NCBI RefSeq assembly: GCF_000143415.4 | Contig: NW_003314297.1 | Location: forward strand, 800,723 to 864,722 | Length of the DNA: 64,000 nt | Direction of reading: 5' to 3' | From: Selaginella moellendorffii | Lineage: Eukaryota > Plantae > Lycopodiophyta | Shown: piece by piece, positions 20,306 to 63,649 of the stretch | Layout of the letters: every line of letters begins with the position of its first letter | Numbering within the stretch: the first letter of the stretch is position 1 | Notes under the pieces: model-generated | Databases searched by the model: none | What the model was told of the DNA's origin: nothing | What the model saw: only the letters and a program-made list of their open reading frames with translations | Position numbers and translations under genes: made by a program

Positions 20306-20639
20306 TCAGGAGAAATGCCATTCCTTGCCAGGTCTGTGACATTACAATCCATCTGTGAGTTGTCATGCGGCCTACGTGGCTCGTGCAAGGCCTCAAGGTG
20401 GACTTAAACAATTGGGGCGAATTTTACTCGCCACACCAGATCGATTGGAATGAGCTCCTCCTTTTTGAATAAACATATACTGTCAATGTCCGCTGCGCAA
20501 AATTCAGAGTTGGAGATATTCTCTGGAACAAAACATATATAGAAAGGTGCAAGTTTTACGTAGTTATAAATTGAGGAACTATATCCCCTCCTGTCAAATC
20601 TATTTTTATTTCATTGAATTCCCCCTAATAAAAATAGAT

Positions 20640-20850
20640 TCACATCATAATATATTTGATTGCATAATGAGATTCAGCACTTGAAAATTTATGGCTTTCA
20701 AAAGCAATTATATGACTGTCTTGCGTGAGCACAGCACTAATTCCCGCATCACTTACATTTGTTATCACTATGAACGACTTTGCAGCATTTAGAAGAACAA
20801 TGATAGTTGTCATCACTACCATCTTAAGCTGTGCAAACCTAGAAGCTACT
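20640..20850 (-). pseudogene. Decayed Ty3/Gypsy RT-RNase H fragment
   Basis: Translation SDAGISAVLTQDSHIIAFESHKFSSAESHY resembles Gypsy RNase H (DAS..GIGAVL.Q..HPIAF.SRKL..AE.NY). Confidence 0.65.
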
Positions 20851-22016
20851 GCTTTATTCCACTTTATAAAGAAACAGAAACAGCATTAATGTATACCACA
20901 GAAACAGCATTAATGCATACCACAGAAACAGCGAGCAAACCACTACACATGTGTTGTTTGTTTTTTGTTTCAGGCAAGCAAGAAACAAGCCAATCACTAC
21001 ACATGTGTTTTGGCTGACCAAATTATACTACTGCCCTATAGTAATATTTATAAAGAGTTAAACTTTTCTTATTGCTTGATACAAGTATGGCGTGCAATTC
21101 GTAAAAGGGTGGATTTTACAACTGTGGATTTCATTCACACCACGTGTATGCTTGCTATTGGTCCACATGTATTATGAGTGTGAAAAAAACACAGGCATAG
21201 AATATTTTACGAATATCCAATCCTTATGCCCCGGATGGGGCATCATGCCCATAGCAATGACCCATGCTATGTATGGAATGGAGCCATTCATGGCCCATAG
21301 ACCCATTCATCCCATGCATTCGACCAAGTTGTTAATGTTGCAAACCAAATGGACAATCGACTAAATTGCATACCATACTACCTTATCTAGAGCACTATGT
21401 TCTCACGTCTTGCTCTTGGCGCTCATGGCAAGAGTTTATCTTTCGTTGCAATGCATTTACGAATTGCACGCCTTTTTTAACATAGTGTCATAGCAAGCAT
21501 AAGTGAACTCCATCTAGAATTTGGGATCGCTGTGTCCTCCCCACATTGCCGACCGCCGCTGTGCTGCTCGCAATCATCGATGCTCCCATTGTTACCCGCC
21601 GCAGCGTCTAGGCAATCATTGAATCCTCTTGCTTCCTCCGTCTTGCATTGTGATTCTTGAGGTGCATTCACCATGGACGTGAAGAACTCCTGGGCTCTCA
21701 TAGCTGGAAAATGTTGGAAATTGAGTCACACCTGGGCACACCTCTTTTAACATAGTGTTTATAGCAAACATAAGTGAACTCCATCTAACTCCATTGCAAA
21801 GCCATGGATATATACTATCTGGAGTCATGTTTTTAATGGATCCCATTGAGTTTATCTTTTGTTGCAATTGATTTCCAGTGTAGCTCTCTCAACACTTGAG
21901 TTTTGTACCATGATGCTTAGAAGATTTGCATATGACTCAAAAGTAGGTTGAAGTCTAACCAATTCAATGAATTGGTGGGGCTTATACTTCAATTGTAAAG
22001 GTGCATAGTGTTGATG

Positions 22017-22290
22017 TTTGGACCTAGAGTTCTCTCAAGAGGAGCATGCTAAAGGAAATTTGAGAATGTGGAAGTTGCAATTGCATGTAGTAACATTCAG
22101 GATAACAATAGACACTTTCAACATTTTCCAATTATAATTGTTTCAAATTGGACCTGGAGTTCTCTCAAGAGGAGCATGCTGAAGGAGATTTGAGAATATG
22201 GAAGTTGCAATTACATGTAGTAACATTTAGGTGAGAAGAGCAATGACAATGGACACTTACAATATTTTCCAATCATAACCGTTTCAAATT
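22017..22290 (+). repeat. ~130-bp direct tandem duplication inside the transposon
   Basis: TGGACCT(A/G)GAGTTCTCTCAAGAGGAGCATGCT...GTAGTAACATT occurs at ~22018 and ~22149. Confidence 0.75.
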
Positions 22291-23039
22291 TTGAAATTTG
22301 TAAAAAGGGTTTCCAAGCATGGGGCAAAACTATCCAATGTATGCCGTGCGCTACGGCCGAAGAACTGGAGTTTTCAGGGATTGGAAGCTCGTGCTCACTT
22401 TGGTAAGAGTAGATTTGTAATAGTTTCCTATATGGTCTAACCCTTTTGCAATGTTTGAGGTTTTTGGGTTTCCTCCTAGCATGGCAAACTAGAGAGGATT
22501 TTATGAGGCACAACAATGGATCCAATAGGGACAGGACTGAGGATTCTATATGATGCCTCCTCCTCTCAAGGCTCGACAATCCCTTCGACAAGGCAGCCTA
22601 AGACTACTTCTAATCTTGTGTCAATCACCGAGGGGAAAGGTCCTGCTGAAGAAAGTGACAGTGAGGGATATGTTACTGCTCGAGATGCAAGCGAGGACGA
22701 GTTCACAAACCCAGAGGGTGATTTTGGTTCTACCAAACAGGTTGAGAGTTCCTCAAGTGAGGATGGGCATCATGTAGCACCCAAGCTCAATAGTTTTGAC
22801 CCAGAACCTAAATTGGGAGCTGCTTTGGAAGCTATAATGATTACCCTTGGTGAGACAAGCATAAGCCAAAAGGGTACCAAGGGCCGCAAGTGCCTATAAT
22901 GGGCATTTATAGAATATTTTGAATATTCTTACCTTTAACTTTGCCAATGAACTGGAAAGAGTCTCTTTCAAAGTGTGAAACATATTTCAAGACAATTATC
23001 TATTTTTATTGTGAAAGTGTCTACATTACTTCCACAACA

Positions 23040-26000
23040 TCAGCCCAATCCATACAAGCTCTCTGGATTTTGGAGTGCCCGGTGGATCTTGTGTTTGGTC
23101 CACTCCTTTGACGGGTATGTTAAAGGGAAGAAAACTTCTCGTGTGCATGTGGAGAACCTGGGAAATCGAGTAGATGATGTACTCTGTCTCTCAACTTGGA
23201 TCCAAATAGGCTCTCCTGGTCGGAACTCTAGAGAATCAACCGCAAAGTGATGGAACTTGGATAACTCTTTCGGGCTCATATCTATAAAATGTTCAAACAT
23301 ACAAGAGTTTTAGTTGTTTGTGAAAGTAAATAGTTACCTCGAATGATGTCCACAATCCAGTTGCGGAAGTTCTCTCCAAAGTCCTGATCAAAGATCAGGC
23401 AGTTGATGAATTCCGCAGGAGGAATGATCGTCCTTACCCGGAAGACCTGTAACAAAGCATCTGTCCCAATGAGTGAAAGCCCACCTAGCAATGCTGGACT
23501 CTTGTAAGGCCTCTAACGAGCTTCCATGCGCATTGAGTGTTGGAAGCCATCTTGGAGTAAGTCTCCCACTACGTTTGGCTCGATGAATAGATAACGCCAA
23601 ACCACCGCAGCCATGCATGCCTCCACAGCCTACTCATAACCTTCACCAAGTTCGGTGAGTCTAGACTCAAGCACTGCATTGTAGTCAGTAATTGCAGGGT
23701 TCTCTAGGATGGAATCCACAGACTTGCACCGATCGCCCTCCTCTTTTAGGCTTGATGCACCTCACAATTGGTTGAGTGCATTCCAGATATGCGGCACGCA
23801 TGCCTTGAGGTCCATCTCATATAATCCTCCTCGGGCAAGTCGTCAGTCATCCTCGTTTGGAACCTCTCCAACTGCAATTGCCAATGTTGCAATTGTACAC
23901 CCGCGAGAAACTTGTGCATTACATTCGAACGCTTAGAATAGCAACCATCCCACAAAGATAGCCTGTGCATATAAAAATGAGGAGCATATAAAACTTGTGC
24001 TTTAAACTTAACTTACCACATCCCGCTTTTCTTGTCGTAACGTCCTAGAATGCACTGGCATCCCAGGATGCCAATATGTGGCTCCTTCCCTAAGCACAAA
24101 CAGTCCACGCGTCTATAACACAAAGTTACTCTAGTGAGCCAAGTGAAAATTAGACTTACCGATCCTGGAATCTAGCGAACAGCCTCCCTAATGGCTTTTG
24201 CATGTGGCCCACCCGCATCTATTGTGGATTCCTCCCACACCAAAGCTCCTCCAATCTCAGACGCATAGACTACTTTGTAATTCGGTGTGCGGAGATTAGT
24301 ATTGAAGGTGAATTGGAAACAACTGAATTTATTGTTTGGTGCAATCTAGAAGGACAAGTGAGGTAACTCCAATTCATAGGCAATCCATTGCTTACCAGAA
24401 TGCAAGATGGCCTCAAACGTGTACGAGCAAGTCTGTATGGCCGAAGCATAGCCTTCTCGATGCAAAAACGAGAGAACTTATAATACAATGTTTCAGCAAT
24501 GTCAAATAGTTCTCTCAATTGTTGTGCAGCCGCCCAATTCCTACGTAGGTCCCTGCACAAAACCATAAGATGGTACTAAGTGCTAAGAAATAGATACACG
24601 TACCTCTTCTCAATGAACCGTGCTATTGTGGATTTAAGAATTGAAGGAAGCACATTAATACTTACTTTAGCAAGGAGCTGTTGGATTGTGTTGTCACAAA
24701 ACACATCCTCGTACTGTGCTTCTGAAAGGCCAAGCTTAAGGAGAAGACTCTCCCAATCTTGCCAATGAGGCATGGCTTGGTTGAAAAGCACGCGCCGCAG
24801 AAATATTTCGCCGCCAGCCCAATGGAATTCAGGGTGTCTAGCAATAACGTCTAGCATCTCCTCGTCACTTGTGCTCTCCACGCCAAAGCAACTAAGAAGC
24901 TTGTGTTTCAGCCACTGCACCTGTGAGAGAACTTCAACATCCCCCTGTGCCCTCACCTCAAGGGTTGTGGTGGCATCCTGTAAGGCAAAAACCTCCTCAA
25001 TCTGCAGCATGATGAAGTTGGCACTATCCTGAGTGGTTAACTGAACAGCTTCATTAAATGCATTGGTGGCATCAATCCATCTTTGTTGACACTCCAACAA
25101 TCTACATGCAAACATTAGTTCAATTTTGAATGCCACAATTTTCAATTATCTTACTCTACTGTAGAAAAGTTATCAAGCAACTCCATAAGAGTAAATAGAG
25201 TGGAGCTACTTCCCTCTAGAAAGGGGGGTGGAGGCACACCATGGTCTTCAAGGCCTCCGCCATCACTGTCATACACTACCATTGGCCTATCTGCACTCAA
25301 AAATTAGAAAATGAAGAAAATATTCATTTATGTTAATGCTTTTTACCAGCCGCATGGCCTGGAGCCACTATCTCTGGTGACAAGGATGTCTCTGGAGATC
25401 CTTGGTGCGGTTCATCCCCACCATCACCTTGTTCTTCGACTCCACTAATGTCCATATTGTCTTGTGTGGGGAGAATTTCTTTCGGTAATGGAAGAATGTC
25501 CTTTTCATCCGCAGAGTCTTCTTCTTCATTATTCTCGTAAGGGTTTGGTTCCTGCGTGGCTGGCCTTGGATCATCATTTGCAGTCAAGGTATTTGTAGCA
25601 GCTATAACTGCAAAGACCACAACATATATTTGTGAGGAGGGAACTTAAAAAAAAAATGACTTACGTTCACGAACATCCTTCTCCTTGAGTGCTCGGGCCT
25701 GTTTTTGATAACGTAGCCAATGTTTGTCAGTATGATGCTCCATAACATTGTATAAATATATTACTATTGCCCGATTGCCATTGGCCTTGTTTGCTATAGC
25801 TCCCCATGATGTTTGAGGAGGCCAGTAGCAAGGCCAGATAGAGCTGAGGCCAAATTTTGCAGACTCGGCATGGGCCTCACCACCATTGGACTACCTTGCA
25901 TGCCAAACAAATGCTCCTGGGTTGGTCATGGATAAAGGTTGGATTCCTGAGGCTTGGAGTGATAGTAGAATCGCATGTTGGGCTGTGCCGGGCTGGAAAG

Positions 26001-27170
26001 GATTACTGGAGTATAAGCCACCCCATATGAGACACTCTGGGAGGTCCACTGCCAGCTCGTCAAGTTCCGTCACCTTCACAGATGGCTCTCTTTTCCGCCC
26101 ATATAAGTGTACATGCCAAGTCTTTGGGATTGCAATCCACTTGGTGACAAGAACTGTGGTGAACAGCCGGGGAACCAAGGGTGTCGTAGACGACATCCCA
26201 CCAATGACTTTGGATCGACTGCCACGACGTCCACGACAACAAGATAAGGACTGCCGATTGTTATTGGCATAGGTGTGCACTGCAGCCACAAGCAGTGAGA
26301 GAGTCTGGCACAGTGAAACAAAAATGAGTTAAACAAATCCAAAGAAGAAAAAAATGAAGAGTGCATAGGGTCATGTTATACCTGTGGCTCACATGGCAGC
26401 CCGCCTTGAGGGTCAGCTTGAACATATCTGGATGTCGAAGCTCCACTAGATGATGATGTCGATCCTTGGGAGTAGTTGTGGAATGCTGATGGGGAACTAT
26501 AAGCTCGCTGGTGTGGCGGCATTGTCAACTCACCCTACACAGAAAAACACATGGAAAAAAAAATAGGTACAAATGAAAAACTTACCGAGCTAGACCGCTT
26601 GTTGCTTCGAGAGGTAGATGGCCAGGTACTGGCACTTATACCGGTAGATGGAGTTGCGAGAGTTGTAGCGGTCGGTGGAGTTATGGGGCTGGTAGCAGTG
26701 GCACTATATCGGATTCCGTGAGCACATCCTGTAGTTGGTGTTGGTGGCAGCATTCCAGATTGGACAACACCGTGGGCATGAGGTGTCTGGACTTGCTCAT
26801 TTCGAATGCTTGGGCTGCTACTTTCCAAGGAAGGCGAGGAGAATGAAACATGCTGGAGGTTCCGCATATGTTGCAATGTATGCAATGTTAGGTGGCGCTC
26901 TGCTTGCTCAAATGCAGTCGGGAGCTGTGGATGGGATGCTGTTGGAGTTGATGTCCCTGTTGCGGAGCTTGGAAAATCAAGTGGCTGGCGTGTGTCTCGC
27001 CGGACTGTTGGCTGTACCGATTGCGGAACATCGAGTGCTTGGCTGCGTGCTCGCGAGGTGTTTCCTGTATAGTGTCTACTGCTGTTGAGGCGTGCGGCAT
27101 TCTTGCTTCGAGCCTAGAAACCACAAAGGATTGGTTATGCAAACCTGATCGAGAGAAGCTACCCACCATC
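23040..27170 (-). pseudogene. HECT E3 ubiquitin-ligase-like gene within the transposon (nonsense mutations; 5' end uncertain)
   Basis: EESTIDAGGP (~24205-24235), IFVGWLL, MDLKACVPHIWNAL, LLQDGF, LSKFHHFAVDS, and C-terminal FPRFSTCTREVFFPLTYPSKEW..ALQNPESLYGLG*. These follow HECT motif order including the catalytic Cys. Several in-frame TGA/TAG. Confidence 0.72.
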
Positions 27171-27435
27171 ACAGCTGTGGCGCTCTCGCTTGGGCAGTGG
27201 TCTTGCGATCGGGGGAGTGTGCACTAGAAGCCTTGCCTCCGGTTAGATGACACGAATCGATTGGAAGAACGAACGAACCATCGACAAAATCATGTCATAA
27301 AATGAAATCGCCCCGTATCCAAGGCACAATTAATATGGGTGGGACTTGGTGAAAACCCTAATCCCAAACGTGGGAACCCTAAAATTGAACAAATCAGAAA
27401 TTGAATTTAAATTTGAAATGTACACTAAAGAACAC

Positions 27436-29220
27436 TCAATTTTCTCCGAGTATGGCCAAGTATAATTTTTCCAAAGCTCGTCGCTTCACTGGTGTTGCTG
27501 TAGGCAAGGCACTCTCAATGTAAAGTGGTAGATCTACACCCGCAACATCAGCCATTGCACACGCCATTGTTAAATCCAAATGAAGTAGATATTGCTTGTC
27601 TAAGTTGAGTCCCTCCTGATGCATCAAAAATGCCTGGTTTCGAATAGTGCCAAGAGCCTGTAAGGTAGCCAAACACAACAAAATAGATTTAAAGGAATTG
27701 TTGTATTCTTGCTCTAAAGATTACCTCTGACAAAGTTGCACCTTCGACATTAGAGAGAAATGGTCCGGGAAGGTCTTCAATATCTTTTCCACCAACAGCC
27801 GACATAATCCTACAAAAGCACATTTTATTAAGAATTCTGTAACATTACCAAAATTGTTACCTAAGCTCTCGTTCCATCGGTTGAAATAAGTTTGCAGGAA
27901 CATGAGATGGTCTGAAGTAATCACCACATCGATACGGATGGACCTCATGGAGGTTCCAGGTTGCAACCCAGTGTGAAATATCCTTCTTGAGGTACAGAGC
28001 AAAGACACAACATAAACTCTGGTTGTGCCATGGATTAGATACATCGAGAATTTTTATATCTTCCATGGACTCAAAAAGGTGCTTATAAAACCACACCACG
28101 CACTCAAAGAGCTCTCTCCACAAATGCTCTATGCGCTATAAAATAAATTTGATTTAGTCCTATGAGTCCTTATTTGGAAAAACTCTAACATTGTGAGTAC
28201 CTGGTTACGTGTTGATGTCCCACGTATGAAGCTCCTAGCTGCAAGACCCCAACAGTGGATCATGTCCCTCTCAACCTCATTGTGCTCTGGAGCATTGTCG
28301 CTCCGGAGCATTGTCGCTCCGGATGTGCTTGGGCCTTCCAAATCGACGAATAGCCTGCGCATATGTGTTAAATATTGTATGGGATTCTTTGGAGGTAGCT
28401 AGCTTGCAAGCTACAATATAATGAGTTGCCCCGCAAATAATGGCATGTACATAGAAACCATAGCTTACAAGCTTGCAATATGCTACAATAAACACGTTAC
28501 CATATGTGCTGACAAAAAAACAGAAATGAAAGAATACTCACAATCCATATGGCAAAGTGCATAAGCCTCCTCATTCCTGTAAATCTGTCGTCGAATCCTT
28601 GTCATGTGCCTCTGTTCTAGCCTACTTGGATCGTGAGTGGCTAAGGCCTCACGAATTTGGCATCGGCTAAATCAATATCCTCCAGTTCGACAACTAGATC
28701 GGGAATTGATAATCCCCTAGTTTGTGCTACCTCGATTCATAGCATTATTAGTTCAAACGTGATGAAGTACCTTTTCAAGTGGTACTCTATAATATACACC
28801 TCTCCAATTTAGATCGACAAGCCGCATATATTTGTATAATGTTGGCTTGGAAATTCTAAGATAGCATGCAAGGTAAGCAGTAGTCTTAGTCTCGAAGATC
28901 TTCAGGTGCATCCAAGTGCCAAATGCAGCTGGACTACCGAATCCCCTCAATTGCAAAAAATTATAGAAGGCCTAGAAACATGCAAATCATGAATCTAGGA
29001 GGTTGGAAACTAAGCAAACCTCTGGGAGAGCATTGTTGTCACCATCTATACTGGAACCACAGTCCGAATCACTAAAATTGGATGGAAGGCCATCCACCTC
29101 ATTTTCCTCCACGTCTTCTAGTAAACCTGGAAGAAAAAGTTTCAGTGACATAAATTTGAAGTAAACTAGAGAGGGAACTATACTCATGGTAGGAACTTGA
29201 AAGTCCATAGAGAACAATCG
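27436..29220 (-). pseudogene. IS3EU-type DDE transposase with spliceosomal introns (frameshifted; boundaries approximate)
   Basis: HTH LACYLRISKPTLYKYMR; CHMD|SYCKLVSYGFYVHAIICG; FGRPKHIRSDNAPE; GTSTRNQ|RIEHLWREL; WNLH. A 16-bp tandem duplication at 28289-28320 frameshifts it. Confidence 0.82.
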
Positions 29221-29849
29221 AGTAGTAAATCAAAGCCACTTCCAACACTGCCCACAAAAACATTTCAAACCACTCATTAGCAAACCAAGTTACCTTCCAC
29301 ATCTGCTACCAAGAAACATGCTGAATAATAGAGCACTAAAGCAAGGCACTAAAGCAAGGAAGCATCTCCTAAACCCTATGACCTGATGAATCCCCATGTC
29401 ATGGGGTTAAACTTGATGATATGTGGCATCTATGTGTAACACATTGTTCATATTATGGGGACATCATTGACCCATCGGCTAGCATCCATGGGGTATCCAT
29501 GAGGCATCCAAATGACATTTAATGCCAAACCAATAGAAAACTGCCACATGGACACTGTATTGTGAATGAAATCTACCACAGTAACACTCACCCTTTTACG
29601 AATTGCACGCCATAACAAACATACTTGCGATGTAATGTATCCCTATGTAAACAAACAAAACAACATGCAAAACATTTTTCATATAATGCAAGTGCTCAAA
29701 GAACTTCTTGTCTTCAAACTCCACATAAGCCAAAATTTTCTCCTTGCAATCAAGTAAAACAGGTTTCGCACGTGCAACGTAGTCTTCGAATAAATTACAG
29801 CCAGGGGACTCTGTTCCTCGTCTCCATTGATCTCAGGAACTCAGTCCGA

Positions 29850-31103
29850 ATGGGCAAGGCGATTTGCGTGACTGGAGCTGGTGGTTTCATTGCTTCGTGG
29901 ATTGTTCGTGACCTTCTTAACAAGGGCTTTTCAGTTCATGGCACTGTCCGCAATCCAGGTTCTGGTTTGTTATCTTTGTCCCAGATCTAGTGATGGTGGC
30001 TTTCAGATGACAACGCCAAGTGTGGACATCTTAAGCAACTGGATGGAAGCGAGAGACTAAAACTACATAAGGCTGATGTGCTCGACTATGACTCAATCGC
30101 TGACGCGATTCGGGACTGTGAAGTTGTGTTCCATACTGCTTGCCCTGTAACCGCATCGACTGAGAATCCAGAGGTAGTCTCCTATTTCATTTCTTTTCTC
30201 TGGATAAGGCTGACTGTGTTTTTGAGTCCCAGGATGTTTTGGTGCCAGCAATCACCGGCACTCGCAACGTGTTGAAGGCCTGCGCACAGGAGAGGATCAA
30301 ACGGGTCATTGTCACGTCGTCCGCGGCTGCGGTGATGTTCGATCCAAATCGGCCGGCGGAAAGAATTGTCGACGAGAGCTGCTGGTCTGATACCGACTAC
30401 TGTAAAAAGCTCAAGGTAAACTTATCCTCACCCTCGACGAAGTTACTGTGTTGTACTCACTGAGACTCTTGTTTCAAGCAATGGTATCTTTTAGCCAAGA
30501 CGGAGTCTGAGAAGCTCGCGTGGAGTCTCTCCAAGGAGTACGGCCTTGACCTCATCACGATCTGCCCCTCGTACGTGTTTGGCCCGATGCTCCAGCCAAC
30601 GCTGAATCTCAGCAGTGCGCTCTTGAAGGCTCTCGTGGATGGTTTGTGCTTTAAAAATGCTTCAGAAGCCTGATCGATGTGTCTTGTTTTCCCAGGTCAT
30701 GAAAGCAGCTACCGCGATTCCTCCATTCCGGTTGTGGACGTGAGGGACGTCTCGAAAGCTCACATTCTGGCCATGGACAAGGAGGAGGCCTCGGGGCGCT
30801 ATCTCTGCGTGGAAACGGTTGTGTCCAACAGCGAGATTATCAAGATTCTCAGGGCCAAGTTCCCGCAGCTTCCATATCCAAAAGAGTAAGCGTCTCTAGT
30901 TCGTTTCTGCCGATATCTATAAAGCTAGAAACTCTAGGTGCGTTGCTGAGACGAGCGTTTGGAACCAATCGGGAATCCGTCCCGACAATCTGGGAAGAGA
31001 GAAGCTCTTGGGGCTAATTACTGAATTTGACATACCATTGGAACGGATGCTGTTTGACACTGTTTCCGACATGCTAAACAAGGGACTGTTAAGAGCCATC
31101 TGA
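29850..31103 (+). CDS. CCR/DFR/TKPR-like NADPH-dependent reductase, copy 1 (apparently intact)
   Basis: 6 exons; [35 protein letters not shown] (YxxxK), [18 protein letters not shown]. Confidence 0.9.
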
Positions 31104-31328
31104 TTTACCGGAGAGATTAGAAACATCGGGTCTACCATCTCCCATATAAGAACTTCAATTTGTGTCCTGGAAAATGAAACAAGTTCCTATTTGTGCTATT
31201 CTCTCTGTACAGATTACTGGCTCCAAGTCTTTAGGTGTGAAAGAACTTGCTTGAAGAGACTGAGATCTACACTCCCAAATAAATAACTCAGCAAAACCAA
31301 GAACAAAAACTCCAAGAACACAAGAATA

Positions 31329-32389
31329 TCATGCTTCATCAAAGTCGCATAGTCTCAAAGCCTTCAACCGAAGCTTAAATCGTCCGGGTGCCGCACAAGC
31401 TAGCTCGATGTTGCTGTGTTTCTCCAGTCCATAATTCACGACATCACTCGAGACATGTTTGGTTGCCTGGTCAGAAAGTTCTCGAGGAAGACTGAGGCTA
31501 AAACCACCAAAAATCTCGACGACTGTCACCTGTGGTTTTGATCTTGATGCAAACTCTTCTCTCCACGCCACCAATCTTCCGCTGCTTACAATCCTCCTCA
31601 CTTGCTCCTCATCGAAGCCAAAGTGGCGGTACCACGAAAGCACCAGCGCTTGGGACGCAGGATTGAGCACTGCCAGCGGCGGCGACCACGGCAAAAATCC
31701 TTGCTTCTCCGTGTCTAGCGGCTCGATCTCTGGATTGAAGCGTCTCATCGCCGCCAGACCCAAGCTATAGATGCTCTCACTGTTGGTTTGCCTGTGCCGG
31801 TACGTGCTCGACTCCAAATCCCACTGCAAGACCGTGAGAGCCTCCACCAGGCTCACATCTCGCTCCTTGGAGGCCTCGATGCACCACAAGATCATCCCCA
31901 GCACACGGACAAGGCTGTTGTCTCTTCGCACCTGGAAGATCCCACACGGATACGCAGTTCCAGCCCCTGTGAACTGGAACTCTCCCTGTAAACTGGCAAG
32001 AAGTTCCTCTCCTCTCCTGGAGCGCACACCGAGCAAGCCATGTCGTCCACCATGATGGTTTGCTCCATGTCCACCTCGATCGCCGTGGGAGATCCCACTG
32101 TGAATCCGTCCACCCGGTAGAGATGGTTCTGCGAGAAGACACTGCAATCCTTGAGGCCTCCTGCTGTGCATGCTGGGAAAATGTCGGCCAGGAGGCTTGC
32201 AACGAGCAGCGGGTTTCGCGATTCCGGGCCGAAGCTGAAGAAGCTGACGCTCATACCTGGGATTTGGCTGAGCGCGAGTAGAAACTCGCGGCATCCATGC
32301 AGCGGCGCGTAGGAATCGCCACCGGCAGAGTGTTTGCCGCCGCGATCGAGGCGAACAAGCGTCCGGTCGAGGTCCAAGAGCACCTGCAT
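31329..32389 (-). pseudogene. Intronless FCP1/NIF-like HAD phosphatase, copy 1 (frameshifted)
   Basis: MQVLLDLDRTLV. In-frame deletion near 32095 and a 1-nt deletion at ~31986 relative to the intact copy at 55585-56664. Confidence 0.78.
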
Positions 32390-38476: not shown

Positions 38477-38936
38477 CGCTTTGCTTGCTGCCTACTCGTG
38501 AATCTCCTCCTTGCGGATCAGGGAAGAAAATAAAAAATATTAGGGCTCTACATTTGAATAATCGAGGGCGTGAGGATTAGGGCATGCGAGGTGGGCCCGT
38601 TAAGGGTAACTAGCTGTTTCTCGAATATGCATACTTCTATTATTAATACCCTTACCCTAACCCTAACCCTTCTAACCCTTAAGCATGACGTGACGGTCAA
38701 TGTCCGCTGCGCAAAATTCAGAGTTGGTTGGCTTCGCAAGTTGGAGATATTCTCTGGACATAATGCGAGTGCTCAAAGAGCTTCTTGTCTTCAAGCTCCA
38801 CTTAAGCCAAAATTTTCTCCTTGCACTCAAGTAAAACAGGTAACGACAAGTTTCGCACGCGCAACGTAGTCTTCGAATAAATCACAGCCAGGGGACTCTG
38901 TTCCTCGTCTCCATTGATAGCAGGAACTCAGTCCGA

Positions 38937-40190
38937 ATGGGCAAGGCGATTTGCGTGACTGGAGCTGGTGGTTTCATTGCTTCGTGGATTGTTCGTGATC
39001 TTCTTAACAAGGGCTTTTCAGTTCCTGGCACTGTCCGCGATCCAGGTTCTGGTTTGTTATCTTTGTCCCAGATCTAGTGATGGTGGCTTTCAGATGACAA
39101 CGCCAAGTGTGGACATCTTAAGCAACTGGATGGAAGCGAGAGACTAAAACTACATAAGGCTGATGTGCTCGACTATGACTCAATCGCTGACGCGATTCGG
39201 GACTGTGAAGTTGTGTTCCATACTGCTTGCCCTGTAACCGCATCGACTGAGAATCCAGAGGTAGTCTCCTATTTCATTTCTTTTCTCTGGATAAGGCTGA
39301 CTGGGTAATTGAGTCCCAGGATGTTTTGGTGCCAGCAATCACCGGCACTCGCAACGTGTTGAAGGCCTGCGCACAGGAGAGGGTCAAACGGGTCATTGTC
39401 ACGTCGTCCGCGGCTGCGGTGATGTTCGATCCAAATCGGCCTGCGGAAAGAATTGTCGACGAGAGCTGCTGGTCTGATACTGACTACTGTACAAAGCTCA
39501 AGGTAAACTTATCCTCATCCTCGACAAAGTTACTGTGTTGTACTCACTGAAACTCTTGTTTCAAGCAATGGTATCTTTTAGCCAAGACGGAGTCTGAGAA
39601 GCTAGCGTGGAGTCTCTCCAAGGAGTACGGCCTTGACCTCATCACGATCTGCCCCTCGTACGTGTTTGGCCCGATGCTCCAGCCAACGCTGAATTCCAGC
39701 AGTGCGGTCTTGAAGGCTCTCGTGGATGGTTTGTGCTTTAAAAATGCTTCAGAAGCCTGATCGATGTGTCTTGTTTCCCCAGGTCATGAAAGCAGCTACC
39801 GCGATTCCTCCATTCCGGTTGTGGACGTGAGGGACGTCTCGAAAGCTCACATTCTGGCCATGGACAAGGAGGAGGCCTCGGGCCGCTATCTCTGCGTGGA
39901 AAGGGTTGTGTCCAACAGCGAGATTATCAAGATTCTCAGGGCCAAGTTCCCGCAGCTTTCATATCCAAAAGAGTAAGCGTCTCTAGTTCCTTTCTTCCGA
40001 TATCTATAAAGCTAGAAACTCTAGGTGCGTTGCTGAGACGAGCGTTTGGAACCAATCGGGAATCCGTCCCGACAATCTGGGAAGAGAGAAGCTCTTGGGG
40101 CTAATCACTGAGTTTGACATACCATTGGAACGGATGCTGTTTGACACTGTTTCCGACATGCTAAACAAGGGACTGTTAAGAGCCATCTGA
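38937..40190 (+). CDS. CCR/DFR/TKPR-like reductase, copy 2 (open; VHGTVR->VPGTVR)
   Basis: Same 6-exon structure and motifs as copy 1; stop 40188-40190. Confidence 0.85.
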
Positions 40191-40416
40191 TTTACCGGAG
40201 AGATTAGAAACATCGGGTCTACCATCTCCCATATAAGGACTTCAATTTGTGTCCTGGAAAATGAAACAAGTTCCTGTTTGTGTTTATTCTCTCTCTACAG
40301 ATTACTGGCTCCAAGTCTTTAGGTGTGAAAGAACTTGCTTGAAGAGACTGAGATCTACACTCCCAAATAAAGAACCCACCAAAACCAAGAACAAAAACTC
40401 CAAGAGCACAAGAATA

Positions 40417-43400
40417 TCATGCTTCATCAAAGTCGCATAGTCTCAAAGCCTTCAACCGAAGCTTAAATCGTCCGGGTGCCGCACAAGCTAGCTCGATGTT
40501 GCTGTGTTTCTCCAGTCCATAATTCACGATATCACTCGAGACACGTTTGGTTGCCTGGTCAGAAAGTTCTCGAGGAAGACTGAGGCTAAAACCACCAAAA
40601 ATCTCGAAGACTGTCACCTGTGGTTTCGATCTTGATGCAAACTCTTCTCTCCACGCCACCAATCTTCCGCTGCTCACAACCCTCCTCACTTGCTCCTCAT
40701 CGAAGCCAAAGTGGCGGTACCACGAAAGCACCAGCGCTTGGGACGCAGGATTGAGCACTGCCAGCGGCGGCGACCACGGCAAAAATCCTTGCTTCTCCGT
40801 GTCTAGCAGCTCGATCTCTGGATTGAAGCGTCTCATCGCCGCCAGACCCAAGCTATAGATGCTCTCGCTGTTGGTTTTGTTGTGATGTAAAAAGGGATGG
40901 ACATAACACTCATGAGCTCGACATGACTCAAGGGACATGACTCATGACCACGTGGACATGCCACGTCAGCTGATCGAGACTGACATCTCGACACTCCCAC
41001 TCTGGCTCGATCAGCTGAGAGGATGGACTACCCATCCCACTCAGCCGAAACAGATGGAGAGCAGACTCCCAGTGCAGCGCGATGGCGTTCAAAGGAGTCT
41101 CGAGCCAAAGCCTTCGTGAGTATATCAGCCACCATTGCCTCGGTGGGGCAATATTCCAGCAACAACTTTCCATTTTGGACTTGTTCCCGCACGTAGTGGA
41201 AACGAATCTCGATGTGTTTCGTCCGAGAATGGAATCCCAGCTTCAGCACAAAACGTCTCGAATTCGCCAGAGACGAATTCTCCTCCACGATCGCAGCGGA
41301 GCACACGAACTAAACAGCCGTGTAGATTTTCTGCCAAAGCCTTGTATTGGCTAAAACAGGAGAACACTTCTGATTTATGAGCCAGCAGGTACACGATCAG
41401 GTACCGCGTGTAATCATCCAGGAAGGTGACTACGTAACGTTTGCCTCCCAAAGATTCAACCATAATCGAACAAACGTCCGAGTGTACCAACTCAAGAACA
41501 GAACTTGCTCGAGAATGAGAAATCTGTGGAAAAGGAAAAACGTAGTGTTTTCCACCAACACAAGCTTCGCAGAAGGGCAGCGCGCTCCCAGGCGCCCCAG
41601 GAACATCCACCTTTTTTAGCTGTTGCTCGTTCACGTGACCAAGGCGCTGGTGCCAGGTTGCAAGTGTCGGTGGAACCCGAGCCATCAGCGCCACAGGTGG
41701 AAGGATCACGTGAGCATCCAGGCGGTAGAGCGTATCAACTGGAACTCCAAAAGCGACCTTGTCTCCAGTCTCGGCATCCAGCACGAACGCTCCCTGTGCT
41801 GTGAACAGAGTATCGAAGCCTACTTGAGCAGCAGTTCCAATCGACAGCAGCGTGTGTGTAAGTCCCGGAACATAAGATACAGGATAGATCTCCCGGATTT
41901 CTCCAGAAGAGAGCTGAACCCTGATTGTTCCTTTGCCTAGTACGTCGTGAGCAGAGGAGTCACCGAGTCCCACGGCGTCACTCTCACACGGTTCTTGGTA
42001 GTCAAAAAACAAGGAAGCCATGGGCGTCATATGGAATGACGCTCCAGAATCCAGCCACAGCTCTGGTCCGAGCACGGGCTGGTGGCTGCTGCTTGCAGAG
42101 CGAGCCATCAAGAGCTTACGAGGAGTCCCAGAGCCCTTGTCTTTGTTTCCTTTGTCTTTGTTCTTGGCAGCTTTAACACGATCAGCTTTCTTCTTCTTGC
42201 AATCCCTCGCCAAGTGTCCAGGTTTGTGGCAATAGTGACAAATGCCACGAAAACCAGTGTCGTTCGGCTGAGCTTGAGAGGACGAGGATGATCCTCCCGC
42301 AGCGCCAGCATAAAGCAAGGAAGATTTGGCAGAGGGCATCGCTTCTTTCTTCCCCTTCATCTTGCGTTCTTCTTCAAGTAGGGCACCCACGACTTGATCA
42401 AAGTTCATGGCCATGTGAGATAGAACAGATGCGAGCGTGCTAAACGCAGGCGTGACGGTTGCAAGCAGCAACGCCCTGGCGCGATCATCCGTGACAGGAG
42501 ACCCAGCACCAGTCAATTCAGCCATTAGCCCTCGAATCCGTCCCACGTACACAGCAATGGTTTCACCCGTTTCCATGTGAAGCGCCAAGAATTGTTGATT
42601 CAGCAACATGGAAGAATTGGCGGCTTGGGCCACGAAGATCGTGCAAAGCGACGTCCAGATTTCAGCAGCGGTCTTGGTGAGATCAATCAGTGGCAAGAAT
42701 TCATCGCTCAATCCCAAGCCAATGACGGTGATGGCTTGCTGATTGCGAAAATCCCAATCTGATTGTAGCGTCTGCTCAGCGGGACGAGGCTCAGTCCCAT
42801 CAACGATGTTCCACGCTCGTTTCGCAGAGAGGATCAGCCTGATTCGTGTCGCCCATGTGAAGAAATTCGTGCCACTGAATTTCTCCACCTTCTCTGTGGA
42901 AGCCACGAGAACTTGAGCAGCAACCGGTGGCGGCGGCGGCGGCAGCAGCGGCGGTGGTGGTGGGGGCGGCGGAGGTGGTGGTGGGGTTGAAGCGGCCATG
43001 ACAGCAACGTCAAATCAACCAACCAGGATCGTCCCCGAAATCCGATACCATGTTGTGGTGTAAAAAGGGATGGACATAACACTCATGAGCTCGTTCATTG
43101 TGTTCCGACTCTTTTTACACGACTCAAGGGACATGACTCATGACCACGTGGACATGCCACGTCAGCTGATCGAGACTGACATCTCGACAGCCGGTACGTG
43201 CTCGGCTCCAAATCCCACTGCAAGACCGTGAGAGCCTCCACCAGGCTCACATCTCGCTCCTTGGAGGCCTCGATGCACCACAAGATCATCCCCAGCACAC
43301 GGACAAGGCTGTTGTCTCTTCGCACCTGGAAGATCCCACACGGATACGCAGCTCCAGCCCCTGTGAACTGGAACTCTCCACTGTAAACTGGCAAGAAGTT

Positions 43401-53645: not shown

Positions 53646-54094
53646 CGCTTTGCTTGCTGCCAACTCGTGAATCTCCTCCTTGCGGATCAAGGAAGAAAAT
53701 AAAAAATATTAGGGCTCTACATTTGAGTTAGTGACGTGGATTAGGGCATGCGAGGTGGGCCCGTTAAGGGTAACTAGCTGTTTCTCGAATATGCTTACTT
53801 TAATACCCTTTCTATTATTAGGCGCCCTTACCCTAACCCTAACCCTTCTAACCCTTAAGCATGACGTCACGGTCAATGTCCGCTGTGCAAAATTCAGAGT
53901 TGGTTGGCTTCGTAAGTTGGACATATTTTCTGGACATAATGCGAGTGCTCAAAGAGCTTCTTGTCGTCAAGCTCCACATAAGCCAAAATTTTCTCCTTGC
54001 AAAACAGGTTTCGCACGCGCAACGTAGTCTTCAAATAAATTACAGCCAGGGGACTCTGTTCCTCGTCTCCATTGATCGCAGGAACTCAGTCCGA

Positions 54095-55364
54095 ATGGGC
54101 AAGGCGATTTGCGTGACTGGAGCTGGTGGTTTCATTGCTTCGTGGATTGTTCGTGATCTTCTTAACAAGGGCTTTTCAGTTCATGGCACTGTCCGCGATC
54201 CAGGTTCTGGTTTGTTGTCTTTGTTCCAGATCTAGTGATGGTGGCTTTCAGATGACAACGCCAAGTGTGGACATCTTAAGCAACTGGATGGAAGCAAGAG
54301 ACTAAAACTACATAAGGCTGATGTGCTCGACTATGACTCAATCGCTGACGCGATTCGGGACTGTGAAGTTGTGTTCCATACTGCTTGCCCTGTAACCGCA
54401 TCGACTGAGAATCCAGAGGTAGTCTCCTATTTCATTTCTTTTCTCTGGATAAGGCTGACTGTGTAATTGAGTCCCAGGATGTTTTGGTGCCAGCAATCAC
54501 CGGCACTCGCAACGTGTTGCAGGCCTGCGCACAGGAGAGGGTCAAACGGGTCATTGTCACGTCGTCCGCGGCTGCGGTGATGTTCGATCCAAATCGGCCT
54601 GCGAAAAAAATTGTCGACGAGAGCTGCTGGTCTGATTCTGACTACTGTACAAAGCTCAAGGTAAACTTATCCTCACCCTCGACGAAGTTACTGTGTTGTA
54701 CTCACTGAAACTCTTGTTTCAAGCAATGGTATCTTTTAGCCAAGACGGAGTCTGAGAAGCTAGCGTGGAGTCTCTCCAAGGAGTACGGCCTTGACCTCAT
54801 CACGATCTGCCCCTCGTACGTGTTTGGCCCGATGCTCCAGCCAACGCTGAATCTCAGCAGTGCGGTCTTGAAGGCTCTCGTGGATGGTTTGTGCTTTAAA
54901 AATGCTTCAGAAGCCTGATCGATGTGTCTTGTTTCCCCAGGTCATGAAAGCAGCTACCGTGATTCCTCCATTCCGTGATTCCTCCATTCCCGTTGTGGAC
55001 GTGAGGGACGTCTCGAAAGCTCACATTCTGGCCATGGACAAGGAGGAGGCCTCGGGCCGCTATCTCTGCGTGGAAACGGTTGTGTCCAACAGCGAGATTA
55101 TCAAGATTCTCAGGGCCAAGTTCCCGCAGCTTCCATATCCAAAAGAGTAAGCGTCTCTAGTTCGTTTCTGCCGATATCTATAAAGCTAGAAACTCTAGGT
55201 GCGTTGCTGAGACGAGCGTTTGGAACCAATCGGGAATCCGTCCCGACAATCTGGGAAGAGAGAAGCTCTTGGGGCTAATCACTGAGTTTGATATACCATT
55301 GGAACGGATGCTGCTTGACGCTGTTTCCGACATGCTAAACAAGGGACTGTTAAGAGCCATCTGA
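54095..55364 (+). pseudogene. CCR/DFR-like reductase copy 3, frameshifted
   Basis: 16-bp tandem duplication CCGTGATTCCTCCATT x2 at 54957-54988 in exon 5. Confidence 0.85.
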
Positions 55365-55584
55365 TTTACCGGAGATTAGAAACATCGGGTCTACCATCTC
55401 CCATATAAGGACTTCAATTTGTGTCCTGGAAAATGAAACAAGTTCCTATTTGTGTTTATTCTCTCTGTACAGATTACTGGCTCCAAGTCTTTAGGTGTGA
55501 AAGAACTTGCTTGAAGAGACAGATCTACACTCCCAAATAAAGAACCCAGCAAAACCAAGAACAAAAACTCCAAGAACACGAATA

Positions 55585-56664
55585 TCATGCTTCATCAAAG
55601 TCGCATAGTCTCAAAGCCTTCAACCGAAGCTTAAATCGTCCGGGTGCCGCACAAGCTAGCTCGATGTTGCTGTGTTTCTCCAGTCCATAATTCACGACAT
55701 CACTCGAGACATGTTTGGTTGCCTGGTCAGAAAGTTCTCGAGGAAGACTGAGGCTAAAACCACCAAAAATCTCGACGACTGTCACCTGTGGTTTTGATCT
55801 TGATGCAAACTCTTCTCTCCACGCCACCAATCTTCCGCTGCTTACAATCCTCCTTACTTGCTCCTCATCGAAGCCAAAGTGGCGGTACCACGAAAGCACC
55901 AGCGCTTGGGACGCAGGATTGAGCACTGCCAGCGGCGGCGACCACGGCAAAAATCCTTGCTTCTCCGTGTCTAGCAGCTCGATCTCTGGATTGAAGCGTC
56001 TCATCGCCGCCAGACCCAAGCTATACATCCTCTCACTGTTGGTTTGCCTGTGCCGGTACGTGCTCGACTCCAAATCCCACTGCAAGACCGTGAGAGCCTC
56101 CACCAGGCTCACATCTCGCTCCTTGGAGGCCTCGATGCACCACAAGATCGTCCCCAGCACACGGACAAGGCTGTTGTCTCTTCGCGCCTGGAAGATCCCA
56201 CACGGATACGCAGCTCCAGCTCCTGTGAACTGGAACTCTCCACTGTAAACTGGCAGGAAGTTCCTCTCCTCTCCTGGAGCGCACACCGAGCAAGCCATGT
56301 CGTCCACCATGATGGTTTGCTCCATGTCCACCTCGATCGCCGTGGGGAGATCCCGGAGCCTCTTGATCACTGTGAATCCGTCCACCCGGTAGAGATGGTT
56401 CTGCGAGAAGACACTGCAATCCTTGAGGCCTCCTGCTGCTGTGCATGCTGGGAAAATGTCGGCCAGGAGGCTTGCAACGAGCAGCGAGTTTCGCGATTCC
56501 GGGCCGAAGCTGAAGAAGCTGACGCTCATACCTGGGATTTGGCTGAGCGCGAGTAGAAACTCGCGGCATCCATGCAGCGGCGCGTAGGAATCGCCACCGG
56601 CAGAGTGTTTGCCGCCGCGATCGAGGCGGACAAGCGTCCGGTCGAGGTCCAAGAGCACCTGCAT
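55585..56664 (-). CDS. Intronless HAD-superfamily (FCP1/NIF-like) phosphatase with unknown C-terminal domain, copy 3 (intact, 359 aa)
   Basis: Motif I DLDRT at the N-terminus, GCREFL..L, SFFS (motif II), IKRL (Lys) and TIMVDD (motif IV); uninterrupted ORF. Confidence 0.8.
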   Translation of the reverse strand: MQVLLDLDRTLVRLDRGGKHSAGGDSYAPLHGCREFLLALSQIPGMSVSFFSFGPESRNSLLVASLLADIFPACTAAGGLKDCSVFSQNHLYRVDGFTVIKRLRDLPTAIEVDMEQTIMVDDMACSVCAPGEERNFLPVYSGEFQFTGAGAAYPCGIFQARRDNSLVRVLGTILWCIEASKERDVSLVEALTVLQWDLESSTYRHRQTNSERMYSLGLAAMRRFNPEIELLDTEKQGFLPWSPPLAVLNPASQALVLSWYRHFGFDEEQVRRIVSSGRLVAWREEFASRSKPQVTVVEIFGGFSLSLPRELSDQATKHVSSDVVNYGLEKHSNIELACAAPGRFKLRLKALRLCDFDEA

Positions 56665-63431: not shown

Positions 63432-63649
63432 TTTACCGGAGAGATTAGAAACATCGGATCTCCCATATAAGGACTTCAATTTGTGTCCTGGAAAATGAAA
63501 CAAGTTCCTATTTGTGTTATTCTCTCTGTACAGATTACTGGCTCCAAGTCTTTAGGTGTGAAAGAACTTGCTTGAAGAGACTGAGATCTACACTCCCAAA
63601 TAAAGAACCCACCAAAACCAAGAACAAAAACTCCAAGAGCACAAGAATA

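What the first reader, a model, noticed from the sequence alone, without database searches (positions are those of the whole stretch)
21086..29614. IS3EU-like DNA transposon in a land plant, carrying a HECT E3 ubiquitin-ligase gene
Seen: a 26-bp perfect TIR (TATGGCG...CGCCATA) brackets 8.5 kb that is absent from the three paralogous promoters. Inside are two co-oriented spliced genes: a DDE transposase (HMD / RSDNAPE / NQRIEHLWR) and a gene with HECT motifs in order, including the terminal STC catalytic Cys. Knowledge (from recall): IS3EU elements have TAY..RTA termini, this transposase signature and a second ORF, and are described mainly from animals and fungi. Inference: a plant lineage of IS3EU (old retention or horizontal transfer, e.g. 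from a fungus) whose ubiquitin ligase might remodel host silencing factors or turn over the transposase. Neither gene is visible in the ORF track because introns and lesions fragment them.
Basis: partly seen in the sequence, partly recalled or inferred. Interest (0 to 1): 0.9.

Follow-up and report, generated by a model that had tools for sequence, protein, structure and literature searches.

The report
Clubmoss GingerRoot transposon carrying HECT gene
This is a dead copy of an 8.5-kb cut-and-paste DNA transposon of the already known IS3EU/GingerRoot kind in the clubmoss Selaginella moellendorffii. What is unusual is that every full-length copy also carries a very divergent HECT-type ubiquitin-ligase gene, which I could not find described for any transposon.

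Summary
A perfect 26-bp TIR (TATGGCG…CGCCATA) bounds window 21086-29614, and the three paralogous promoters lack the insert. The minus strand carries two co-oriented, multi-exon genes. One is a DD35E transposase of about 490 aa (Pfam rva_4/rve). The other is a 747-codon gene ending in a divergent HECT domain with its catalytic Cys. The host is Selaginella moellendorffii, or something very close to it.

The transposase matches the published S. lepidophylla GingerRoot core block for block. The termini are the TAYGG..CCRTA of IS3EU. A plant IS3EU lineage is therefore already published (Cerbin 2019; Kojima 2023), not new.

Two things differ from the published elements. The TSD is 5 bp (perfect in four copies), not 6. 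The second gene is HECT-like, present in all six full-length copies examined and intact in one (SELMODRAFT_407700).

The window copy is dead. The transposase has three stops and a 16-bp duplication. The HECT gene has six C>T stops, though all its splice sites are intact.

No selection signal was detectable for either gene among the copies. RNA support is a single spliced contig. E3 activity and any anti-silencing role are inference only.

First-stage notes record the same pairing on other pieces of this genome. Verdict: a new variant of a known kind, of moderate interest.

The parts
21086..21111 (+). Terminal inverted repeat at the gene-3' end of the element (TATGGCGTGCAATTCGTAAAAGGGTG). Imperfect complementarity continues to 21139.
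29589..29614 (-). Terminal inverted repeat at the gene-5' (transposase) end; perfect reverse complement of 21086-21111.
21081..21085 (.). Left copy of the 5-bp target-site duplication (ACAAG). It is degraded, matching the right copy at 4 of 5 bases.
   Evidence: Other copies have perfect 5-bp TSDs.
29615..29619 (.). Right copy of the 5-bp target-site duplication (ACAAA).
27436..29229 (-). Transposase gene: about 6 exons and about 490 aa, with an uncertain start. It has an N-terminal acidic region and an HTH, then a DD35E core. The catalytic codons are D 28543-28545 (HMD), D 28297-28299 (RSDN) and E 28127-28129 (RIEH). The conserved stop follows ...ILGEN. The gene is dead in this copy: stops at about 28755, 28719 and 28674, and a frameshift from a 16-bp duplication.
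28278..28323 (.). A 16-bp unit repeated 2.9 times in tandem inside the D2 (RSDNAPE) exon. It gives a +16 frameshift that is private to this copy.
26538..27113 (-). Ser/Thr/Pro-rich open frame of about 190 codons between the two genes. Some public gene calls join it to the transposase or to the HECT-like gene. Whether it is coding is unresolved.
   Evidence: only in-frame indels in two copies; no Pfam hit
23043..25743 (-). HECT-like gene: 10 exons, 747 codons. Exons: 25665-25743, 25347-25607, 25155-25290, 24957-25101, 24604-24920, 24396-24552, 24160-24345, 24017-24112, 23338-23962, 23043-23281. All GT-AG sites are intact and there are no indels. Six in-frame stops lie at codons 423, 469, 499, 526, 570 and 609; each replaces a Gln or Arg codon, consistent with C>T. 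The ancestral frame stays open upstream to about 26304, so the true start may lie further 5'.
   Evidence: A spliced RNA(?) contig crosses the last intron.
23043..24345 (-). Divergent HECT domain (exons 7-10, about codons 395-747), running from the N-lobe start ...IDAGGPHAKAIREAV... to the C-lobe ...FPRFSTCTREVFFPLTYPS...YGLG.
23145..23147 (-). Putative catalytic Cys codon (FSTC), 34 residues from the C-terminus. It is conserved in all six full-length copies.
21456..21472 (-). Internal copy of the TIR core (GGCGTGCAATTCGTAAA), inverted relative to the nearby terminus and about 370 bp inside the element. It is conserved in the three youngest copies only. It could be an extra transposase-binding site or a remnant of a nested short element.

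Best explanation
Window 21086-29614 is a decayed, immobile copy of an 8.5-kb family of IS3EU/GingerRoot DNA transposons in Selaginella moellendorffii, or a very close relative.

Shown: the element has 26-bp TIRs ending TATGG..CCATA and makes 5-bp target-site duplications. It carries two co-oriented, intron-containing genes. One is a DD35E transposase of about 490 aa with an N-terminal HTH. The other is a 747-aa protein whose C-terminal ~350 residues form a very divergent HECT domain. That domain keeps the catalytic Cys 34 residues from the C-terminus. The HECT-like gene lies between the TIRs in all six full-length copies examined, each at a different locus. It is still an intact 10-exon ORF in one of them. 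It was therefore a gene of the progenitor element, not a one-off captured fragment.

Inferred: the transposase binds the TIRs, cuts the element out and pastes it in with a 5-bp stagger. The HECT-like protein takes ubiquitin from a host E2 onto its Cys and passes it to substrates chosen by its non-HECT N-terminal half. This would benefit the element, for example by removing a host silencing or chromatin factor or by controlling the transposase.

All copies seen are now dead and are decaying neutrally under a spectrum of more than 80% C>T changes.
For: Structure: the TIRs are perfect and not due to chance. The insert is absent from the paralogous promoters.

Transposase: Pfam rva_4 E 1.9e-13 and rve E 1e-9. 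There is weak similarity to IS481 and IS3 models. The core matches the published S. lepidophylla GingerRoot SL_GR-020 and IS3EU sequences block for block. The termini equal the rust IS3EU TAYGG..CCRTA. The catalytic codons were verified.

Family: full-length copies in the public S. moellendorffii assembly are 88-97% identical to one another and to the window copy. All carry both genes: L001, L003, L002, L004, L005.

TSDs are perfect 5-mers: GCTCA, GAATG, TTTTT, GAGAG.

HECT:
- Pfam HECT E 5.5e-5, 23.4 bits, over the C-lobe.
- UniRef auto-names P0001 'HECT domain-containing'.
- 91 of the 100 nearest Atlas clusters by language-model features are HECT (top score 0.96).
- The Atlas structure aligns 280-299 residues of 395-747 to HECT domains at TM 0.53-0.60.
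- The only PDB hit is the HUWE1 C-lobe, with the Cys aligned.
- FSTC is conserved in six copies.

Gene reality: the 10-exon, 747-codon ORF is intact in L001, and the GT-AG sites are kept in nearly all copies. A depth-6 contig from an RNA(?) run is spliced within 2-3 nt of predicted intron 9.
Against: - The HECT Pfam score is just under the curated cut-off and covers only the C-lobe.
- The AF2 model failed (pLDDT 38). The Atlas model itself has low confidence (pTM 0.48).
- No relative of the HECT-like protein was found outside S. moellendorffii.
- There is no purifying-selection signal among copies. dN/dS of 0.43-0.66 equals the neutral expectation for this mutation spectrum. N:S is 58:23 on internal branches against 215:83 for private changes. 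The transposase shows no signal either, so the test has little power here.
- Three deep RNA runs gave zero reads in a 12% sample.
- GingerRoot elements are known to pick up host gene fragments.
- The 5-bp TSD and short TIRs differ from the published GingerRoot (6 bp, 100-150 bp).
- No formal phylogeny with Repbase IS3EU could be run.
Confidence: 0.8

Rival explanations
1. The HECT-like gene is passive cargo. A host, or horizontally acquired, HECT gene was captured once by the progenitor element (Pack-type acquisition). It was amplified with the element and has no role in the element's life cycle.
For: GingerRoot elements in S. lepidophylla often carry host gene fragments. No purifying selection is detectable among copies. 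The family is confined to one species in the databases searched. Fungal IS3EU elements have repeatedly picked up passenger genes such as TET/JBP.
Against: Known GingerRoot captures are fragments of 84-1654 bp with 79-98% identity to a parent gene. Here a complete 10-exon, 747-codon gene is present. No detectable parent exists anywhere: an exhaustive search of 1.84 billion representatives found only element copies. The gene is far more diverged from canonical HECTs than any plant UPL. The catalytic motif survives in all copies, including the oldest. The same lack of selection signal applies to the transposase.
Confidence: 0.25
2. The two 'genes' are one transcription unit encoding a transposase-linker-HECT fusion or polyprotein, or alternative isoforms of one. 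This is how the public gene calls P0003 (1200 aa) and P0011 (1299 aa) model it.
For: The genes are co-oriented. The Ser/Thr/Pro-rich stretch between them is open for about 190 codons and shows only in-frame indels in two copies. The frame upstream of the annotated HECT start is open for another ~170 codons in the majority state. Fused gene calls exist.
Against: A stop after ...ILGEN is conserved in the four copies checked (WIN, L001-L003), and other gene calls end the transposase there. The fused models need a ~590-bp intron, unlike the 36-57-bp introns elsewhere. They also skip parts of the DDE core to avoid lesions. No RNA evidence spans the junction.
Confidence: 0.2
3. The C-terminal domain is not a working HECT ligase. 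It would be a degenerate or repurposed HECT-like fold, such as a pseudo-enzyme or ubiquitin/E2 binder, or a chance resemblance.
For: Pfam is below the gathering score, and nothing in the N-lobe is seen by Pfam. There are no significant PDB sequence hits. No confident 3-D model exists.
Against: Language-model and structure look-ups independently converge on HECT over the whole 350-residue domain. The catalytic Cys sits at the canonical distance from the C-terminus, with the LP.Y-like and terminal aromatic-G-L-G context aligned to HUWE1.
Confidence: 0.3

Closest known systems
GingerRoot DNA transposons of Selaginella lepidophylla (Cerbin et al. 2019, PMC6839031)
   Same: The host is also a lycophyte. 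The DDE transposase core is closely similar, roughly half the residues by eye (HMDSY.KL / YGF..H.II.GAT..IVAC / R.D.A.EHN / ST.NQRIEH.WR). The termini are TA..TA. The element size is similar (8.5 kb here, against an 8.9-kb average).
   Different: The TSD is 5 bp here, not 6. The TIR is 26 bp perfect and about 54 bp imperfect, not 100-150 bp. The published description mentions no second gene, HECT or ubiquitin.
IS3EU superfamily (Repbase; Kojima 2023 PMC10045372; rust IS3EU in PMC12730594; Styx/REP9 of Zymoseptoria PMC10853768, PMC8232023)
   Same: It has an IS3/IS481-like DD35E transposase without an HHCC finger. The termini are TAYGG..CCRTA. It is a two-gene element. The Pfam rva_4 core is present.
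   Different: The second gene in rust IS3EU is an alpha-kinase in the opposite orientation, sometimes with TET/JBP as well. Here it is a co-oriented HECT-like gene. The TSD is 5 bp rather than the usual 6.
Transposon-borne accessory enzymes that act on host regulation. TET/JBP dioxygenases of fungal DNA transposons come from PMC12730594. ULP1 proteases of KI-MULEs and VANC of VANDAL elements come from my own knowledge.
   Same: Each is a non-transposase enzyme gene carried as a stable part of a TIR element and is plausibly used against host silencing.
   Different: The chemistry differs: ubiquitin ligation rather than demethylation or deSUMOylation. No functional evidence exists here.
Canonical plant HECT ligases (UPL1-7; Marín 2013, PMC3712016)
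   Same: It shows a predicted bilobal HECT fold with a C-terminal catalytic Cys.
   Different: It is too divergent to reach the Pfam threshold. It was not counted among the nine S. moellendorffii HECT genes. Its N-terminal half has no recognised UPL domains. It is encoded inside a transposon.

Membership tests
IS3EU/GingerRoot DNA transposons | DDD/E (DD35E) transposase core with the IS3EU/GingerRoot sequence signature | tested here: met
   Pfam rva_4 E 1.9e-13 on the window exon, and 66.8 bits for rva_4 against 16 for rve in P0017. The spacing is D-56-D-34-E. The core agrees block by block with the published SL_GR-020 and IS3EU rows. This was a comparison by eye, not a tree.
IS3EU/GingerRoot DNA transposons | Phylogenetic placement inside the IS3EU/GingerRoot clade, apart from IS481EU, Ginger1/2, Polinton and LTR integrases | not testable with these tools
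Only one non-Selaginella homologue (P0026) was recovered.
IS3EU/GingerRoot DNA transposons | TA..TA termini (TAYGG..CCRTA in rust IS3EU) | tested here: met
   TATGGCG...CGCCATA in the window and six other copies.
IS3EU/GingerRoot DNA transposons | 6-bp target-site duplication ('usually 6 bp') | tested here: not met
   Perfect 5-bp TSDs in four copies (GCTCA, GAATG, TTTTT, GAGAG) and 4/5 matches in two more. Extension to 6 bp occurs only at the rate expected by chance.
IS3EU/GingerRoot DNA transposons | No HHCC zinc finger upstream of the core; an HTH-type N-terminal region instead | tested here: met
   No H..H..C..C pattern appears in the N-terminal ~200 residues. Weak HTH_17/HTH_22 hits fall on ...ISKPTLYKYMRLV....
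IS3EU/GingerRoot DNA transposons | Long TIRs (100-150 bp in S. lepidophylla GingerRoot; more than 30 bp in rust IS3EU) | tested here: inconclusive
   26 bp perfect, and 54 bp at 85%. This is shorter than GingerRoot but comparable with rust IS3EU.
IS3EU/GingerRoot DNA transposons | Two protein-coding genes per autonomous element | tested here: met
   The transposase plus the HECT-like gene are present in six full-length copies.
HECT E3 ubiquitin ligases | HECT domain recognised by the curated profile (PF00632 at or above the gathering score) | tested here: not met
   23.4 bits against a cut-off of 23.9, E 5.5e-5, covering only profile positions 213-301. The window exon alone scores 20.5 bits.
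HECT E3 ubiquitin ligases | Bilobal HECT fold of about 350 residues at the C-terminus | tested here: inconclusive
   The Atlas model of P0001 aligns 280-299 residues (395-747) to many HECT clusters at TM 0.53-0.60, and 91 of 100 feature neighbours are HECT. That model has only pTM 0.48, and my own AF2 model failed.
HECT E3 ubiquitin ligases | Catalytic Cys about 32-36 residues from the C-terminus in a conserved C-lobe context | tested here: met
   FSTC lies 34 residues from the end. It aligns with the HUWE1 catalytic TC and is conserved in six copies.
HECT E3 ubiquitin ligases | Ubiquitin thioester formation and transfer | not testable with these tools
   This needs a biochemical assay.

The most novel reading that the evidence does not exclude
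The HECT-like protein is a genuine, transposon-encoded E3 ubiquitin ligase and a core gene of a lycophyte GingerRoot/IS3EU lineage. It acts as a counter-defence factor by marking a host silencing or chromatin protein for degradation. That would be the first ubiquitin ligase known as a standing component of a eukaryotic DNA transposon.
Probability: 0.15. Interest if true: 0.8.

Novelty: new variant of a known kind. Interest (0 to 1): 0.5.

Why it matters
Transposons that carry enzymes acting on host regulation show how mobile DNA fights silencing. Examples are TET/JBP in fungal elements, ULP1 in MULEs and VANC in VANDALs. I could not find a ubiquitin ligase gene reported as a fixed part of a cut-and-paste transposon in the literature I could search.

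If the protein is active, it points to a new route of transposon-host conflict through targeted protein degradation. It would also provide a very diverged natural HECT for studying what the fold minimally needs.

The finding also extends GingerRoot/IS3EU to a second Selaginella species. It shows that the superfamily's TSD length is not fixed at 6 bp, which matters for annotation tools that use TSD length. Against this, the superfamily in plants is already published, every copy seen is dead, and function is untested.

Tried and rejected
- The word-index protein search with the 92-aa transposase exon found nothing, because of the length window and word filter.
- The Atlas look-up of the 189-aa exon upstream of the HECT domain, and of P0001 residues 150-400, gave only weak helical/TPR-like or HECT-flank leads. 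No domain was assigned.
- phmmer of P0001 against PDB found nothing at E<=1. The C-lobe alone gave one non-significant HUWE1 hit.
- AF2 on the family alignment failed (pLDDT 38), so no fold search was run.
- RNA: the first two requests for runs failed because the machine was busy. Three deep raw-read RNA runs of the same species label then gave 0 reads in a 12% sample. Only one small spliced contig from a fourth run matched.
- Selection tests were uninformative. These were pairwise dN/dS with out-of-frame and permutation controls, and internal-versus-private N:S for both genes.
- I considered and rejected four readings:
  - A clean empty site at the TIR ends. The paralogue junction is wider, at 20527|29683.
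  - A 6-bp TSD with shifted termini. Only 2 of 6 copies extend to 6 bp, as chance predicts.
  - An origin in LTR integrase, Ginger or Polinton. rva_4 scores far above rve, there is no HHCC finger, and the IS3EU signature is present.
  - A coincidental neighbouring host HECT gene. It sits between the TIRs at six different loci.
- Literature searches for a HECT gene in transposons, and for IS3EU in S. moellendorffii, found nothing relevant.


Full report
**Observation**

The claimed terminal inverted repeat is real. Positions 21086-21111 and 29589-29614 are perfectly complementary over 26 nt, and complementarity continues to 54 nt at 85%. The 26-mer occurs only at these two places in the window, against zero expected in shuffles.

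The window contains a four-copy tandem array of NAD-dependent epimerase/reductase-like genes. Aligning the paralogous promoters shows that the other three copies join at the equivalent of 20527|29683. The insert is therefore absent from the paralogues, but the missing block (20528-29682, 9155 bp) is wider than the TIR element.

The extra 558 bp on the left carry an RNase H fragment of an LTR retrotransposon. The transposon evidently landed inside an older small insert.

**Coding content**

Both genes lie on the minus strand and are split by short introns.

Transposase pieces hit Pfam rva_4 (E 1.9e-13) and rve (E 1e-9). The catalytic residues are D in CHMD (28543-28545), D in RSDN (28297-28299) and E in RIEH (28127-28129). 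Spacings of 56 and 34 residues make this a DD35E enzyme. The N-terminal region has weak HTH matches and no HHCC finger.

For the second gene, the window's last exon gave only a sub-threshold Pfam HECT hit (E 4e-4). I used the one exhaustive search of 1.84 billion representatives on that exon. It returned only eight relatives, all close. The best was P0001, a 747-aa protein that is 96% identical.

**Organism and family**

All relatives are Selaginella moellendorffii proteins of assembly GCA_000143415.2. UniRef auto-names P0001 (SELMODRAFT_407700) 'HECT domain-containing'.

Two public gene calls, P0003 and P0011, fuse the rva_4 transposase to the HECT-like protein. That already shows the same layout elsewhere in the genome.

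Fetching the loci gave five further full-length copies: L001, L002, L003, L004 and L005. They are 8.46-8.76 kb long and 88-97% identical to one another and to the window copy. They sit at different loci, and all have both genes in the same order and orientation.

A sixth locus, L007, is a 4.4-kb rearranged deletion derivative. It keeps both TIRs and a TSD but lacks the HECT-like gene.

First-stage notes on other pieces of this genome report the same pairing. My loci from the public assembly agree with them, although I did not see those exact pieces.

**Target-site duplication**

Four copies have perfect 5-bp direct repeats abutting TATGG...CCATA: GCTCA, GAATG, TTTTT and GAGAG. The window copy (ACAAG/ACAAA) and the oldest copy match at 4 of 5 bases. 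Extending to 6 bp works in only two of six copies, as chance predicts. The TSD is therefore 5 bp.

**Is it IS3EU?**

The literature settles most of this:
- IS3EU has been a Repbase superfamily since 2013. It has TA..TA termini and usually 6-bp TSDs, and it lacks an HHCC finger.
- GingerRoot, described in 2019 from Selaginella lepidophylla, mosses and animals, belongs to the same clade with 99% bootstrap support.
- Rust IS3EU elements end in TAYGG..CCRTA, exactly as here.
- Described IS3EU elements encode two proteins. In rusts the second is an alpha-kinase, sometimes accompanied by TET/JBP.

The supplementary alignment of Kojima 2023 prints the S. lepidophylla GingerRoot core SL_GR-020. The transposase here agrees with it block by block, at roughly half of the residues by eye. 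It shares the IS3EU signature G.S..NQRIE..W. NCBIfam shows only weak similarity, best to IS481 and IS3, as expected for this lineage.

I conclude that this is a GingerRoot/IS3EU element of S. moellendorffii. The closest match being a congeneric plant's element argues for vertical presence in lycophytes rather than transfer from a fungus. The differences from the published descriptions are the 5-bp TSD and the shorter TIR.

**Is the second gene HECT, and is it a real gene?**

On the intact paralogue, Pfam HECT reaches E 5.5e-5 (23.4 bits against a cut-off of 23.9), but only over the C-lobe. phmmer against PDB finds nothing significant. The sole weak hit is the HUWE1 C-lobe, with the catalytic Cys aligned. 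My AF2 model failed on the shallow alignment (pLDDT 38).

The ESM Atlas holds P0001 itself. By language-model features, 91 of its 100 nearest clusters are HECT (top score 0.96, 199 shared features). Its stored model aligns 280-299 residues spanning 395-747 to many HECT families at TM 0.53-0.60.

The Cys in FSTC sits 34 residues from the C-terminus, the canonical position. It is conserved in all six full-length copies.

I take this as good, though not conclusive, evidence for a complete but highly diverged HECT domain. The N-terminal half (acidic, then helical) has no assignable domain.

A survey of plant HECT genes lists nine for S. moellendorffii, none unclassified. This gene has therefore gone unnoticed.

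The annotated model of P0001 has 10 exons and 36-57-bp GT-AG introns, and it translates exactly. Projected onto the window copy, all exons are present without indels and every splice site is intact.

One depth-6 contig from a probable RNA run is spliced within 2-3 nt of predicted intron 9. Three deep RNA runs gave no reads in the 12% sampled.

**State of the copies**

The window's HECT-like gene has six in-frame stops, each replacing a Gln or Arg codon, consistent with C>T. There is one more stop in the open frame upstream.

Its transposase has three stops. One is shared with two other copies. It also has a private 16-bp tandem duplication inside the RSDNAPE exon.

All four copies analysed in detail have dead transposases, each through different lesions. 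Only L001 keeps the HECT-like ORF intact.

Private substitutions are 75-88% C>T/G>A, in CG, CHG and CHH contexts alike.

Pairwise dN/dS (0.43-0.66) equals what this spectrum gives neutrally: a permutation mean of about 0.6, and 0.36-0.87 out of frame. The N:S ratio on internal branches equals that of private changes for the HECT-like gene (58:23 against 215:83). It is not significantly lower for the transposase (20:13 against 107:39, p = 0.2).

There is thus no selection signal, but also no power to detect one. The argument for function rests on three points: the intact ancestral multi-exon ORF, its presence in every full-length copy, and the retained catalytic motif.

**Open points**

- The Ser/Thr/Pro-rich frame of about 190 codons between the genes, and the open frame upstream of the annotated HECT start, may belong to the HECT-like gene or to a fusion transcript.
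- The role of an internal inverted copy of the TIR core, seen in the three youngest copies, is unknown.
- S. lepidophylla GingerRoot elements without captured fragments average 8.9 kb. That leaves room for an undescribed second gene, which I could not check.

**Verdict**

The element is a member of a known superfamily that is already known in lycophytes. It has two new features: a 5-bp TSD and a HECT-like second gene.

How the ligase would help the element is inference. It might ubiquitylate a host silencing factor or the transposase.

Literature searches found no report of a HECT gene in any transposon. Novelty: a new variant of a known kind, of moderate interest.

Noticed in passing
window 21086-29614 and loci L001-L003 (whole element copies): Private substitutions in each of the four copies analysed (window, L001-L003) are 75-88% C>T/G>A (window copy 127 of 144). 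Per-site rates are CG 7.4%, CHG 6.0% and CHH 2.3%, while A>G/T>C changes and transversions are very few. This looks like heavy deamination of methylated cytosines in all contexts. It produces most of the premature stops.
   Followed up: partly
window 20528-21085 and 29615-29682: The transposon sits inside an older insert of about 626 bp that the paralogous promoters lack. The left part encodes an RT_RNaseH fragment of an LTR retrotransposon (20640-20822, minus strand; Pfam E 1.3e-8).
   Followed up: partly
window 22516-22899 (+ strand): An open frame of 127 aa lies on the strand opposite the two genes, between the HECT stop and the TIR. It is 161 aa in the majority state of the copies. One public gene call (P0016) uses it as an N-terminus. 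It has no Pfam hit and may be chance.
   Followed up: partly
window 22018-22290: A tandem duplication of about 130-140 bp (85-93% identical) lies in the non-coding gene-3' part of the element.
   Followed up: no
L007:8744-13159: A 4.4-kb derivative of the same family has both TIRs and a perfect 5-bp TSD (GAGAG). It lacks the middle region and most of the HECT-like gene, and has an internal inversion of the transposase 5' part. It is either a non-autonomous copy that moved or a copy rearranged after insertion.
   Followed up: partly
window 29756-31900, 38843-40700, 54001-55900, 62084-63940: Four tandem paralogues (about 97-99% identical over exonic stretches) of an NAD-dependent epimerase/cinnamoyl-CoA-reductase-like gene. 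Telomere-like CCCTAA repeats lie in the promoters of three of them (for example around 38673-38700).
   Followed up: no
window 28674 (and the same column in L001 and L002): One premature stop (TGA where L003 has CGA) in the transposase is shared by three copies. Either already-defective elements were mobilised in trans, or a CpG hotspot mutated repeatedly.
   Followed up: no
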